Below, one piece after another: positions 17,163-19,646 of a DNA stretch of 64,000 nucleotides. A model generated the notes under the pieces. The model did no database searches. It saw nothing but the letters and a program-made list of their open reading frames with translations, and was not told the DNA's origin. The stretch lies in the sequence record MT133560.1. One strand, given 5' to 3'. Both the position numbers and the translations under genes were made by a program. How positions within the stretch are numbered: position 1 is the stretch's first letter; each line of letters begins with the position of its first letter.

Positions 17163-17192
17163 CATATTGCCTCCCCTAGGGGAGGCTTTATG
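17163..17192. terminator. CATA...TATG-flanked hairpin
   Basis: CATATT-GCCTCCCC-TA-GGGGAGGC-TTTATG. Confidence 0.7.
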
Positions 17193-17262: not shown

Positions 17263-19179
17263 ATGTCTAATGAACAACAGGTTACAAATAAGAAAAAGAT
17301 TAAGGGCATTGAAGCCAAACATATTACTTATTGTACTGATCAATTTGGTAAGTTTACAGATGCACATTTCGTTAAAGAACGAATTCATTTTGAAGATGGT
17401 ACAACTGCAAATAATTTAAGGATGTGGGAAAACTACCAGCGTCCTTTTTGGATTACCTCAAAAGGAATGCGTAACCATAAAGAAAAGAAAGATTACGAAT
17501 ATGAGCGTAACTTAGTTAAATATATGTCAACTCAAATTGACATGAAACGTAAGATTAGTAAAATCCTAGGTGACTATTCGGCTAGATCTCTTCGTCAACT
17601 AGCGCGTAGTCCTTACCTATATGGCAGTGATGTTAGTTCAACCTGTTATCTGAAGCATGATTATCAAGAACGTTATCCTGGTCTAATCTCTCTAAACACT
17701 GTTGCTGGTGGTGACATCGAAACCAACGTTTATGAAGCTGAGAACGATGGTCAGATTATCTGTATGTCAGTCACACATAAGAACAAAGCTTTCTTAGCCT
17801 ATTTAAAACGATGGGTTAGTGATATTGAAGATCCAGTGAAAGAGACATTAGAACAAGCACAAAAAGAAGAGGTGCTATCGCATCTAATTAAAGAACGTGG
17901 TCTAGATATTGAAGTAATGGTTGTTGAAACACCAGTAGATATTATTATTGAATGTTTTAAACGACTACATACCTGGAAACCAGATTTCTTCGCATTCTGG
18001 AATATTAGCTTCGACATTGGTAGAATCTTAAAAACATTAGAACATTATGGTGTTAATCCAGCTGATGTTTTTTCTGATCCATCGGTACCTAAGAATTATA
18101 GGTATTTCCATTTTAAGATTGACGAACCTATGACCACCACTGCATCTGGGGTCACCAAATCTAAAGGACCGGAGGATCAATGGCATTGGATTACAGCACC
18201 CTCTAGTTTTCAATGCATCGATTCTATGTCAACTTATCGTGTAACTCGATTAGCTAAAGGACGTGATCCTAACTATCGATTAGAGTCTATTCTTAGAAAA
18301 GAACTAAACATCGATAAATCTACGACCATTAAAAATGATAAGGACTTAGAAGATTTTATTGAAGGTTTTAATAAACAACTAGTTGACAGGCCAGGCGGAG
18401 TTATTACTAAATATATTAAAAATGTAGGTAGTAATGAATGGGTACCGGTGGATGATTTTATATTAAATAATAACTTTACCTATGGTGATTCTATTAGATA
18501 TGTAATGGAATTTGGTAAGTTAACCTTTAAAGAAACTGCACATCTTGGTGGTATCGACTGGCACCGTGAGATGCAGACTAAACATAAAATCAAATATGGT
18601 CTTTATAACATCATCGACTCCATTCGACTAGAACAACTTGATGAACAAGTAAATGACCTTGGTCGTTCTATAAGTCTATTCTCTAAAGCATCCGATTATA
18701 AGAACTTTAGCTCTAACCCAAAACGACTATGTGATGACATGCATTTCTGGTATCTAAATAGACCAGATCCATGTGTTATTGGTTCGAGTTCTGATCAGAT
18801 GGTACATGAGTTAGATCAGTATGTTATTGGTCATAACGACTGGATTGTTACATTGCCATCTTACATGGCAGGTCCAAATGGATTACAGTGCGTTAAAGAT
18901 TTACCAAATTATAAAACCTTAATCTTCTGCCATATCGCCGACCTTGACATCGTGTCGACATATCCTAACGTTAGTCAGATTCTAAATATTGCACGTGAAA
19001 CATGTGTAATGGAATTCTCGATGATGGAAGGAATTAGTGAACACCATCGCCGCGAAGTTGGCGTAAACTTAACAGGCGGTAGGGTTAATGCTATTGAAAT
19101 CACACAGAAGATCATGGGCGCTCCTAAAATGGATACCCTACTAGAGAAGTTTATTAATACCTATAAGAACCCAAAGTAA
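17263..19179 (+). CDS. Split family-B DNA polymerase subunit: 3'-5' exonuclease plus palm motif A (gp82-like)
   Basis: ExoI GDIETN, ExoII FWNISFDI, ExoIII YNIIDS, motif A DLDIVSTYPNVSQILNIARET; motifs B and C absent. Confidence 0.85.
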   Translation: MSNEQQVTNKKKIKGIEAKHITYCTDQFGKFTDAHFVKERIHFEDGTTANNLRMWENYQRPFWITSKGMRNHKEKKDYEYERNLVKYMSTQIDMKRKISKILGDYSARSLRQLARSPYLYGSDVSSTCYLKHDYQERYPGLISLNTVAGGDIETNVYEAENDGQIICMSVTHKNKAFLAYLKRWVSDIEDPVKETLEQAQKEEVLSHLIKERGLDIEVMVVETPVDIIIECFKRLHTWKPDFFAFWNISFDIGRILKTLEHYGVNPADVFSDPSVPKNYRYFHFKIDEPMTTTASGVTKSKGPEDQWHWITAPSSFQCIDSMSTYRVTRLAKGRDPNYRLESILRKELNIDKSTTIKNDKDLEDFIEGFNKQLVDRPGGVITKYIKNVGSNEWVPVDDFILNNNFTYGDSIRYVMEFGKLTFKETAHLGGIDWHREMQTKHKIKYGLYNIIDSIRLEQLDEQVNDLGRSISLFSKASDYKNFSSNPKRLCDDMHFWYLNRPDPCVIGSSSDQMVHELDQYVIGHNDWIVTLPSYMAGPNGLQCVKDLPNYKTLIFCHIADLDIVSTYPNVSQILNIARETCVMEFSMMEGISEHHRREVGVNLTGGRVNAIEITQKIMGAPKMDTLLEKFINTYKNPK

Positions 19180-19547
19180 TATATCAGTGGAAGCGCCGAG
19201 GAGGATATGAATGTTCATCTGTTGGTGACAAAAGATTCTCGGCTCTTTACGCAAGGCTTCCTGATGGTAGAACAATTGAGGAAGCTTGGCAGTTAGATTG
19301 TAAAGGATATCGCAAATACTCCAACCACTGGAAAGCTGGTAAAGGAAAACCACCACTAGACGGATATAATCCTAAATATGATGATTATAAAAATCTGTGG
19401 AAAGTATGGGCTGTATCTAATAAACATCTAATGGATGAATTACGTCAGAATGCAAAAGAACATGATAACTATCTTTCTGATGTTTTTGCTTCTACTGATA
19501 TTTCACAGGCACGTGCTTTAGCAGAACTACTCAATGAAGGATATTAA
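19176..19547 (+). CDS. Hidden 123-codon start-less ORF, NADAR (T4 gp30.3)-like; probable -1 frameshift extension of the polymerase subunit
   Basis: Hand translation VIYQWKRRGGYECSSVGDKRFSALYARLPDGRTIEEAWQLDCKGY...QARALAELLNEGY*; first in-frame ATG only at 19431; C_CCA_AAG at 19170-19176. Confidence 0.75.
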   Translation, partial: VIYQWKRRGGYECSSVGDKRFSALYARLPDGRTIEEAWQLDCKGYRKYSNHWKAGKGKPPLDGYNPKYDDYKNLWKVWAVSNKHLMDELRQNAKEHDNYLSDVFASTDISQARALAELLNEGY

Positions 19548-19613: not shown

Positions 19614-19646
19614 TCATAAAACCCTCCCATTACGGGAGGGTTTATT
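19614..19646. terminator. Bidirectional terminator hairpin
   Basis: CATAAA-ACCCTCCC-ATTAC-GGGAGGGT-TTATT between convergent genes. Confidence 0.8.

What the first reader, a model, noticed from the sequence alone, without database searches (positions are those of the whole stretch)
19168..19547. Candidate programmed -1 frameshift fusing the DNA polymerase subunit to a NADAR-like ADP-ribose eraser
Seen: the PolB subunit ends ...AAC CCA AAG TAA, with a canonical X_XXY_YYZ slippery heptamer C_CCA_AAG (19170-19176; A_AAG is the dnaX/lambda-G type) directly before the stop. The -1 frame is open for 123 codons to TAA at 19545-19547 and has no ATG/GTG/TTG until 19431. A stem with 11 of 12 pairs (19191-19202 with 19236-19247) lies 14 nt downstream, longer than the usual 5-9 nt spacer. 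Inference: a fraction of ribosomes make a 761-aa polymerase carrying a NADAR-like domain, which would place a guanine-ADP-ribose eraser at the replisome against DarT1-type defence. Alternative: a stand-alone gene whose TAATG-coupled ATG became ATA (19179).
Basis: partly seen in the sequence, partly recalled or inferred. Interest (0 to 1): 0.92.

Follow-up and report, generated by a model that had tools for sequence, protein, structure and literature searches.

The report
Frameshift extends phiKZ-type DNA polymerase
In phiKZ-like giant phages, the DNA polymerase gene ends in a classic ribosome slip site, so a share of polymerase molecules most likely carry an extra, unannotated 123-residue enzyme-like domain; related phages keep this link by three different slip sequences, by a leaky stop codon or by outright gene fusion.

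Summary
The window is a Phikzvirus (100% identical to phage fnug). Its polymerase ORF (phiKZ gp82) ends C_CCA_AAG_TAA, and the -1 frame is open for 123 codons with no start codon before 19431.

That frame encodes a real, strongly conserved domain (phrog_9995; dN/dS 0.02-0.08). In unrelated phages it is a stand-alone ~125-aa protein with its own ATG.

The case for -1 frameshifting is comparative and strong:
- I found 35 distinct polymerase-to-domain junctions.
- In all 26 where the domain lies in the -1 frame, exactly one X_XXA_AAG heptamer (C_CCA_AAG, G_GGA_AAG or A_AAA_AAG) sits where the -1 frame is already open. The background rate is 4 in 13,900 in-frame positions.
- 20 of these 26 have no start codon.
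- Three lineages have the domain in frame after a TAG.
- One close relative and one distant relative have a plain fusion ORF.

There is no experimental proof here, and no conserved stimulatory RNA structure.

The "NADAR-like" label is weak. Pfam and profile-profile tests are negative. NADAR/YbiA structures give only the best, non-significant, fold matches (TM about 0.5).

The DarT counter-defence idea is untested. No paper or GenBank record I could search describes this recoding.

The parts
17169..17186 (+). Terminator-like hairpin upstream of the polymerase gene. It marks the 5' boundary of the polymerase-plus-extension transcription unit.
17263..19179 (+). DNA polymerase ORF (phiKZ gp82 homolog), 638 aa, the zero frame. 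It carries a PolB motif-A-like DLDIVSTYPN.
   Evidence: phrog_3011, E 1.3e-241; distant homolog P0222 weakly hits PolB models
19170..19176 (+). Slippery heptamer C_CCA_AAG in X_XXY_YYZ phase: the proposed -1 shift site.
   Evidence: conserved or replaced by G_GGA_AAG / A_AAA_AAG in all 26 -1 junctions
19177..19179 (+). Zero-frame TAA stop directly after the heptamer. It may act as a 'shifty stop' stimulator (inferred).
   Evidence: a stop directly follows the heptamer in 14 of 26 junctions, as TAA, TAG or TGA
19176..19547 (+). -1 frame extension: 123 sense codons (VIYQWKRRGGYECSS...NEGY) plus TAA. It encodes the conserved phrog_9995 domain.
19179..19181 (+). ATA codon that aligns with the initiator Met of stand-alone homologs. 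PhiPA3 has ATG here. It is not a canonical start.
19187..19252 (+). It is moderately stable and not conserved.
19431..19547 (+). The only piece annotated in phiKZ (PHIKZ082.1, 38 aa). It is simply the C-terminal third of the domain.
   Evidence: phrog_33573 = residues 86-123
19619..19643 (+). Intrinsic-terminator-like hairpin after the extension, between convergent genes. No terminator lies between the polymerase stop and the domain.
   Evidence: weak Rfam hits here are terminator look-alikes

Best explanation
The gp82-type DNA polymerase gene of phiKZ-like phages carries a programmed -1 ribosomal frameshift site at its last two sense codons (C_CCA_AAG, followed by TAA). Most ribosomes terminate and make the 638-aa polymerase. 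A fraction slip back one base, either by tandem slippage on CCA-AAG or by slippage of the P-site lysine tRNA from AAG to AAA while the stop waits in the A site. These ribosomes read on through ...N-P-K-V-I-Y-Q-W-K... for 123 more codons, giving a 761-aa polymerase with a compact, enzyme-like C-terminal domain (phrog_9995 family). Shown here: the anatomy, the coding status of the extension, and the evolutionary conservation of a slip site or an equivalent device (readthrough, fusion). Inferred: that the shift happens in vivo, how efficient it is, and what stimulates it. The domain's chemistry is unknown. It is probably an enzyme that acts on nucleic acid or a nucleotide adduct at the replication fork. 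Tethering it to the polymerase would also carry it into the phage nucleus (speculative).
For: (1) Anatomy confirmed.
(2) The unannotated 84 codons upstream of ATG 19431 are under strong purifying selection in the -1 frame only. dN/dS is 0.05 against PA7, 0.02 against PhiPA3 and 0.08 against L016; the other two frames give 1.6-2.2 and contain stops. The AlphaFold model has pLDDT 96.9.
(3) Of 35 distinct polymerase-to-domain junctions, 26 have the domain in the -1 frame. All 26 have exactly one X_XXA_AAG heptamer inside the stretch where the -1 frame is already open: C_CCA_AAG 14, A_AAA_AAG 10, G_GGA_AAG 2. The background rate is 4 per 13,900 in-frame positions. The joint chance probability for the 19 lineages in hand at that call is 1e-49 if they are treated as independent.
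(4) In the C_CCA_AAG clade the codon before CCA encodes N, P, S, A, L or V but always ends in C. This points to nucleotide-level, not protein-level, constraint.
(5) These are exactly the three heptamers reported as highly shift-prone in E. coli (PMC5009743).
(6) 20 of the 26 junctions lack any ATG/GTG/TTG near the domain N-terminus. The codon at the Met position is ATA, GTA, ACA, ACT, GTT, GTC, AGC and so on. In non-polymerase contexts, 46 of 59 homologs have a nearby start (40 of them ATG) and the other 13 lie inside long ORFs.
(7) In A_AAA_AAG lineages the polymerase zero frame continues 24-96 nt past the slip site, beyond the domain N-terminus. Termination-reinitiation cannot serve there.
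(8) The device changes on the tree while the linkage stays. A TAG in-frame clade is nested in the A_AAA_AAG clade, and G_GGA_AAG arose twice.
(9) True fusion ORFs exist. L121 is 201phi2-1-like and encodes exactly the predicted trans-frame peptide PKVVSPSIVYTWKR. P0222 is a 698-aa protein from a distant phiKZ-MCP phage, with a polymerase 23-30% identical and the domain in frame at residues 562-678.
(10) Two relatives without the domain downstream (L118, L135) have no such heptamer at the polymerase 3' end.
(11) The polymerase and the extension share one terminator-bounded unit.
Against: There is no direct evidence of the trans-frame protein, and I could find no proteomic or ribosome-profiling report. 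No conserved stimulatory RNA structure was found: the alifold consensus is -5.95 kcal/mol, z-scores range from +1.4 to -3.7, and no upstream SD-like element is evident. Rfam gives no frameshift-element hit. Six -1 lineages do have ATG or GTG at the Met position (PhiPA3, L102, 201phi2-1, Viktualia, PS119XW, L128), so a free domain may also, or instead, be made there. A sister clade (D6, Psa21, L098, L103, L104) has the domain in the +1 frame without a recognisable shift site. Junctions are phylogenetically related, so the 1e-49 figure overstates independence; the tree needs about 6 changes of device. Whether Pseudomonas aeruginosa decodes AAG with a single tRNA-Lys(UUU), which underlies A_AAG shiftiness in E. 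coli, was not checked.
Confidence: 0.85

Rival explanations
1. The domain is a stand-alone gene translated by termination-reinitiation or leaky initiation at the non-canonical ATA (19179) that overlaps the TAA stop. The heptamer is only the codons for a conserved Pro-Lys C-terminus.
For: ATA aligns with the initiator Met of the family. PhiPA3 and L102 have TAATG at the same spot, and 201phi2-1, Viktualia and L128 have GTG. Stand-alone homologs are the rule outside jumbo phages.
Against: 20 of 26 -1 junctions have no start. The codon at that position is not even near-cognate in many (ACA, ACT, AGC, CAG, CCC). In A_AAA_AAG lineages the polymerase stop lies 24-96 nt downstream of the slip site. 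The base before CCA is always C whatever the amino acid. The heptamer switches to G_GGA_AAG or A_AAA_AAG rather than decaying. Sister taxa L016 (ACA) and L102 (ATG) show the start is dispensable while the heptamer is fixed. Plain fusion ORFs exist.
Confidence: 0.07
2. The fusion is made at the nucleic-acid level rather than by the ribosome: RNA-polymerase slippage at the short C or A runs, or a subpopulation of genomes with a 1-nt indel.
For: L121 differs from 201phi2-1 by one extra C in the C-run and so encodes the fusion directly. A6 runs are present in the A_AAA_AAG lineages.
Against: Runs of 3-6 bases are far shorter than those known to support productive transcriptional slippage (about 9 or more, established knowledge). 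The constraint is on the X_XXA_AAG phase relative to the zero frame, which matters only to ribosomes. All 47 Phikzvirus genomes have the same run length.
Confidence: 0.04
3. The stretch 19176-19430 is an untranslated remnant. Only the annotated 38-aa PHIKZ082.1 (19431-19547) or nothing is made.
For: This is how GenBank records annotate the region.
Against: dN/dS of the unannotated part is 0.02-0.08 in the -1 frame, even between two lineages that both lack a start (window against L016). This part holds the family's most conserved motifs (GYECSS.GD.RFSA, DGRTIE). The 38-aa piece is only the last helix of a single compact fold.
Confidence: 0.02

Closest known systems
Phage lambda G / G-T tail assembly chaperone frameshift (G_GGA_AAG) and its equivalents across tailed phages
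   Same: A -1 frameshift near the 3' end of an upstream phage ORF joins it to a downstream ORF that lacks its own start, giving a minor C-terminally extended product. The arrangement is conserved by position while the slip sequence varies between lineages. G_GGA_AAG is used here in L018 and L132.
   Different: The gene class is different: a replicative polymerase plus an enzyme-like domain, not a morphogenetic chaperone. Here some relatives use TAG readthrough or a plain fusion instead.
Bacterial dnaX tau/gamma frameshift (A_AAA_AAG)
   Same: The same heptamer class in a replication gene; A_AAA_AAG is used in 10 of the junctions. It produces two replisome proteins in a fixed ratio (PMC5009743).
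   Different: The dnaX shift truncates the protein after one codon and relies on an upstream SD-like element and a downstream hairpin. Here the shift adds a 123-aa domain, and no conserved stimulator was found.
Gag-Pol type expression in retroviruses and related elements, where relatives interchange -1 frameshifting, stop-codon readthrough and direct fusion
   Same: The same evolutionary pattern. The linkage of two modules is kept while the recoding device changes: -1 heptamers, in-frame TAG, fusion ORFs.
   Different: This is a prokaryotic system with different genes. The readthrough cases here are inferred from sequence only.
NADAR / YbiA family (Pfam PF08719)
   Same: YbiA (2b3w, TMq 0.53) and Phytophthora NADAR (8bau, 0.43) are the best TM-score matches in the PDB search. 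Seven NADAR proteins appear among the weak BFVD matches. Like NADAR, the domain is found fused to DUF4326 (PMC9503650).
   Different: No sequence or profile similarity: Pfam gives nothing and hhalign gives probability 0.1%. All fold E-values exceed 0.1. The domain is about 30% shorter.
Stand-alone phrog_9995 proteins (e.g. PhiPA3 gp084, 201phi2-1 gp143, Delftia phage RG-2014, Achromobacter N4-like phages, Sphingomonas phage PAU gp29)
   Same: The same protein family, at 50-87% identity, E down to 1e-70.
   Different: Outside polymerase contexts these have their own ATG or lie inside larger ORFs. Their function is uncharacterised.

Membership tests
Programmed -1 ribosomal frameshift site (bacterial X_XXA_AAG class) | Slippery heptamer X_XXY_YYZ in phase with the zero frame | tested here: met
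   C_CCA_AAG at 19170-19176 in phase with the ORF 17263..19179
Programmed -1 ribosomal frameshift site (bacterial X_XXA_AAG class) | -1 frame open from the slip site into a conserved coding region that has no start codon of its own | tested here: met
   123 open codons, first start at 19431; dN/dS 0.02-0.08
Programmed -1 ribosomal frameshift site (bacterial X_XXA_AAG class) | Slip site conserved, or replaced by an equivalent slippery heptamer, across diverged relatives beyond what amino-acid conservation explains | tested here: met
   26 of 26 -1 junctions, three heptamer types, variable preceding residue with a fixed third base, background 4 per 13,900
Programmed -1 ribosomal frameshift site (bacterial X_XXA_AAG class) | Stimulatory element (downstream structure, upstream SD-like element, or adjacent stop) | tested here: inconclusive
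   phiKZ stem z = -1.9. No conserved structure. A stop directly follows the heptamer in 14 of 26 junctions but lies 24-96 nt away in the A_AAA_AAG lineages.
Programmed -1 ribosomal frameshift site (bacterial X_XXA_AAG class) | Trans-frame protein demonstrated and its efficiency measured | not testable with these tools
   Needs mass spectrometry, western blot, ribosome profiling or reporter assays. No report found.
NADAR / YbiA (PF08719) | Match to the Pfam NADAR model | tested here: not met
   No NADAR hit for the window protein or any of 61 family members, even at E <= 10
NADAR / YbiA (PF08719) | Profile-profile similarity to a YbiA-family alignment | tested here: not met
   hhalign probability 0.1%. 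Only FSAL/FSNF...DG[KR] aligned, 13 columns. Both profiles have low diversity (Neff 2.3-2.6).
NADAR / YbiA (PF08719) | Same fold as solved NADAR structures | tested here: inconclusive
   2b3w TMq 0.53 and 8bau TMq 0.43 are the top TM scores, but E is 2.8-4.1. Several NADAR proteins score TMq 0.42-0.53 in BFVD with E of 0.6 or more.
NADAR / YbiA (PF08719) | Catalytic residues and N-glycosidase / ADP-ribose-removing activity | not testable with these tools
   Family-invariant polar residues exist (E11, S13, D17, R31, E34, Q38, D40, K42, D101, Q110). Their equivalence to NADAR catalytic residues was not established.
phrog_9995 (uncharacterised phage protein family) | Full-length match to the family profile | tested here: met
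   E 2.5e-55, residues 3-123 on profile positions 2-123 of 124. 693 homologs found and 839 representative clusters.

The most novel reading that the evidence does not exclude
The appended module is a miniaturised NADAR/YbiA-like N-glycosidase. Nucleus-forming phages smuggle it into the phage nucleus by translating it as a minor, frameshift-dosed extension of the replicative polymerase. At the fork it would strip base adducts, such as DarT-type ADP-ribosylation, from template DNA. Recoding, rather than a simple fusion, would set the ratio of plain to 'repair-armed' polymerase.
Probability: 0.15. Interest if true: 0.9.

Novelty: new member of a known kind. Interest (0 to 1): 0.75.

Why it matters
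phiKZ is the model nucleus-forming jumbo phage. Its polymerase gene gp82 is used in knock-down and localisation studies, yet the 3' extension is unannotated or mis-annotated in every record I inspected. If the frameshift is real, three things follow.

- The replisome contains two polymerase isoforms, one carrying an uncharacterised, widely distributed enzyme-like domain. Phenotypes assigned to gp82, such as Pf4 induction on knock-down (PMC12571901), may partly belong to that domain.
- It would add a replicative DNA polymerase to the short list of phage genes with conserved recoding (tail chaperones, capsid, dnaX-like). It would also give a natural series of -1 heptamer, readthrough and fusion variants for studying how recoding devices are exchanged.
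- It gives a functional handle on phrog_9995, a family with hundreds of members in phages, mobile elements and giant multi-domain proteins. The handle is that the domain works next to DNA synthesis.

It also flags a systematic annotation gap for gene callers in jumbo phages.

Tried and rejected
- **Domain family searches.** Pfam, NCBIfam and PADLOC scans of the domain gave only noise.
- **PDB sequence searches.** Searches with the domain, its profile and the polymerase found nothing relevant.
- **hhalign against a YbiA-family alignment.** Negative in local and global modes.
- **Foldseek.** No significant non-family hit.
- **Pfam scans of multi-domain relatives.** DUF4326, DUF488-N3a and RNase H fusions were found. 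Seven giant proteins of 1,360-4,206 aa had no Pfam hit at all.
- **Genomic context of stand-alone homologs.** Sak, RecD2-like helicase, SNase, KfrA, ParB and integrase neighbours indicate mobile-element replication and recombination modules but no specific function.
- **RNA structure.** RNAalifold and per-lineage folding found no conserved stimulator. Rfam found no frameshift element.
- **SD-like GAGGAGG plus ATG at 19207 / 19211.** I considered it as an internal start. Both ATGs are out of frame with the domain and give 29-aa and 5-aa ORFs. The motif is just the R-G-G codons and is absent in many relatives.
- **TAG as a general sense codon in the in-frame lineages.** Rejected: long neighbouring ORFs are intact under the standard code and contain no internal TAG.
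- **-2 or +1 slippage on GAA_AAG_AAG in the +1 clade.** I could not make a convincing mechanism; it is left unexplained.
- **Literature searches.** Nothing found for this frameshift.
Full report
**What the window is.** The 1.1 kb around the finding is 100% identical to Pseudomonas phage fnug, 98.8% to phiKZ, and 95.6-95.9% to the PA7/SL2 group of Phikzvirus genomes; 47 records match in all. The ORF 17263..19179 is phiKZ gp82, annotated 'DNA polymerase' (phrog_3011, E 1.3e-241). The region downstream of its stop is unannotated except for a 38-aa ORF from ATG 19431 (PHIKZ082.1). Some records also carry a spurious 29-aa ORF.

**Check of the observation.**
- The ORF ends AAC CCA AAG TAA, and C_CCA_AAG at 19170-19176 is in X_XXY_YYZ phase.
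- The -1 frame is open from 19176 for 123 codons to TAA at 19545-19547, and it has no ATG/GTG/TTG before 19431.
- The stem 19191-19202 / 19236-19247 has 11 of 12 pairs. It is part of an MFE fold of -22.5 kcal/mol with z = -1.9.

**The -1 frame is a real gene product.**
- The 123-codon translation matches phrog_9995 end to end (E 2.5e-55, profile positions 2-123 of 124).
- It has 693 homologs in the word-indexed search and 839 representative clusters in the exhaustive one.
- Most homologs are stand-alone proteins of about 122-130 aa that begin M-[YF]-x-W-x-R. The phiKZ ATA codon at 19179 aligns with their initiator Met.
- The 84 codons upstream of the annotated ATG hold the family's most conserved motifs. 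They evolve under strong purifying selection in the -1 frame only: dN/dS is 0.05 against PA7, 0.02 against PhiPA3 and 0.08 against L016. The control frames give 1.6-2.2 and contain stops.
- AlphaFold2 with the family alignment gives one compact domain with mean pLDDT 96.9. The 38-aa annotated ORF is only its last helix.

**How is it translated? Comparative evidence.** I collected polymerase-to-domain junctions from GenBank phages, IMG/VR and metagenome contigs. I analysed them with one script. There are 35 distinct junctions.

*The 26 junctions with the domain in the -1 frame.*
- Every one has exactly one X_XXA_AAG heptamer, in phase with the polymerase frame, inside the stretch where the -1 frame is already open.
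- C_CCA_AAG occurs in 14: phiKZ group, PhiPA3, 201phi2-1, PS119XW, Phabio, Viktualia, L016, L019, L102, L105 and L128.
- A_AAA_AAG occurs in 10: Noxifer, L023, L024, L026, L051, L061, L107, L109, L126 and L129.
- G_GGA_AAG occurs in 2: L018 and L132.
- Outside these windows the motif occurs 4 times in 13,900 in-frame positions of the same polymerase ORFs.
- In the C_CCA_AAG clade the residue before Pro-Lys is N, P, S, A, L or V, but its codon always ends in C. The constraint is therefore on the nucleotides.
- These three heptamers are the ones singled out as highly shift-prone in E. coli (PMC5009743).

*Start codons.*
- 20 of the 26 have no ATG/GTG/TTG within 15 nt of the Met position. The codon there is ATA, GTA, ACA, ACT, GTT, GTC, AGC, CAG, CCC and so on.
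- In the A_AAA_AAG lineages the polymerase zero frame runs on for 24-96 nt past the slip site, into the domain. Reinitiation after termination cannot explain expression there.
- By contrast, of 59 distinct homologs in non-polymerase contexts, 46 have a nearby start (40 of them ATG) and the other 13 lie inside long ORFs.

*Other devices that keep the same linkage.*
- Three junctions (L073/L075, L090, L127) have the domain in frame directly after a TAG, with no start. In all three the TAG is followed by C-T.
- Neighbouring long ORFs are intact under the standard code, so TAG is not a general sense codon there.
- L121, a 201phi2-1-like contig, has one extra C. It encodes as a single ORF exactly the trans-frame product predicted for 201phi2-1 (...PKVVSPSIVYTWKR...). 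A homopolymer assembly error cannot be excluded for this one.
- P0222 is more telling. [quoted passage not shown] Its polymerase is only 23-30% identical to gp82, with the domain fused in frame at residues 562-678.
- Two relatives whose polymerase is not followed by the domain (L118, L135) have no such heptamer at the 3' end.

*Phylogeny.* A maximum-likelihood tree of polymerase C-termini gives this picture.
- A_AAA_AAG sits on the deep branches.
- C_CCA_AAG plus an adjacent stop sits in a well-supported crown clade (100/98).
- G_GGA_AAG appears twice.
- The TAG clade is nested within A_AAA_AAG lineages.
- Start codons are scattered at the tips; for example L102 has ATG while its sister L016 has ACA.

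The device changes while the linkage persists.

**Mechanism proposed.**
- A minority of ribosomes shift -1 on C_CCA_AAG. This could be tandem slippage, or slippage of the P-site lysine tRNA from AAG to AAA while the adjacent stop occupies the A site.
- The second route is an inferred 'shifty stop' effect. A stop of any of the three kinds directly follows the heptamer in 14 of the 26 junctions.
- These ribosomes produce ...NPK-VIYQWK..., 761 aa in total.
- I found no conserved stimulatory RNA. The phiKZ stem is not kept in PhiPA3 and others. The alifold consensus is weak (-5.95 kcal/mol). Folding z-scores of the 70 nt after each heptamer range from +1.4 to -3.7. Rfam finds no frameshift element.
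- The polymerase and the extension lie in one unit bounded by terminator-like hairpins at 17169-17186 and 19619-19643.

**What the domain is.**
- There is no Pfam, NCBIfam or PADLOC assignment and no PDB relative by sequence.
- Foldseek finds no significant non-family match. However, the only PDB hits with TM above 0.4 are E. coli YbiA (2b3w, TMq 0.53) and a NADAR-ADP-ribose complex (8bau, 0.43).
- In BFVD, seven NADAR and five DUF4326 proteins populate the weak tail.
- A profile-profile test against a YbiA-family alignment is negative: probability 0.1%, with only FSAL/FSNF...DG[KR] aligned.
- The domain occurs fused to DUF4326, DUF488-N3a and RNase H, and inside giant proteins. DUF4326 is reported to be fused to NADAR, Macro and SLOG domains and to replication components (PMC9503650, PMC7824862).
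- My reading is that this is an enzyme-like module working on nucleic acid or a nucleotide adduct, possibly a very remote NADAR-fold relative. The chemistry is unknown, and the anti-DarT1 role is untested.

**Why a fusion?** This part is inference.
- Among the phages in the tblastn search, the only ones with a gp82-type polymerase that carry the domain are the Pseudomonas jumbo phages, and there it always follows the polymerase gene.
- Non-jumbo phages carry it as a free early-region gene.
- Riding on the polymerase would deliver it into the phage nucleus and to the fork. Recoding would keep it sub-stoichiometric.

**Novelty.** No record annotates a slippage join, and no paper in the searchable library mentions it. 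The mechanism class is classical, so I rate this as a new member of a known kind. Its gene context (a replicative phage polymerase) is unusual, and the comparative support is unusually rich.

**Caveats.**
- All evidence is computational.
- Junctions are related by descent.
- Efficiency is unknown.
- A free domain may also be made where a start exists.
- The +1-frame clade is unexplained.
- The host tRNA-Lys repertoire was not checked.

Noticed in passing
L009 1190-1225 (phage D6), L010 (Psa21), L098, L103, L104: A clade sister to phiKZ has the domain in the +1 frame, overlapping the polymerase 3' end. All five share GAA_AAG_AAG just upstream of the domain. D6 and L103 have GTG and Psa21 has TTG at the Met position. 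L098 has only a TTG 12 nt upstream, and L104 has no start within 45 nt. I found no convincing +1 or -2 slip mechanism.
   Followed up: partly
L073 2495-2500, L090 2480-2485, L127 (metagenome): The domain lies in frame directly after the polymerase TAG stop, with no start codon. The TAG is followed by CTA or CTG in all three. Neighbouring ORFs use the standard code. These are candidates for programmed readthrough or suppressor-tRNA decoding.
   Followed up: partly
L141 4001-6097 (JAXDEL011023356.1) and L121: These are plain in-frame polymerase-domain fusion ORFs. P0222 (698 aa) comes from a distant phage with a phiKZ-type capsid gene. L121 is a 201phi2-1-like contig with one extra C in the C-run; an assembly error is possible for L121.
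   Followed up: yes
L113 2501-2806 (PhiPA3, NC_028999.1): A group I intron (Rfam RF00028, 71.7 bits, E 5e-17) interrupts the PhiPA3 polymerase gene between residues equivalent to gp82 562 and 563, just before the motif-A-like DLDIVSTYPN. This explains why the PhiPA3 'DNA polymerase' CDS is annotated as ending about 580 nt before gene 084. L115 has a gap of about 370 nt at the same site, with no Rfam hit.
   Followed up: partly
window 19198-19296: An SD-like GAGGAGG followed by ATG (19207) opens a 29-aa ORF that one record (KEN49) annotates as a gene. It is out of frame inside the conserved domain, and the motif is just the Arg-Gly-Gly codons. It is probably spurious.
   Followed up: partly
window 17263-19179 (gp82): A published antisense knock-down of phiKZ082 induced the host Pf4 prophage (PMC12571901). 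Blocking translation of gp82 would also remove the frameshift extension, so that phenotype cannot be assigned to the polymerase part alone.
   Followed up: no
P0136, P0148, P0155, P0158, P0170, P0192, P0216: The same domain sits inside giant predicted proteins of 1,360-6,146 aa. The seven I scanned (1,360-4,206 aa) have no Pfam hit at all, so their nature is unknown.
   Followed up: partly
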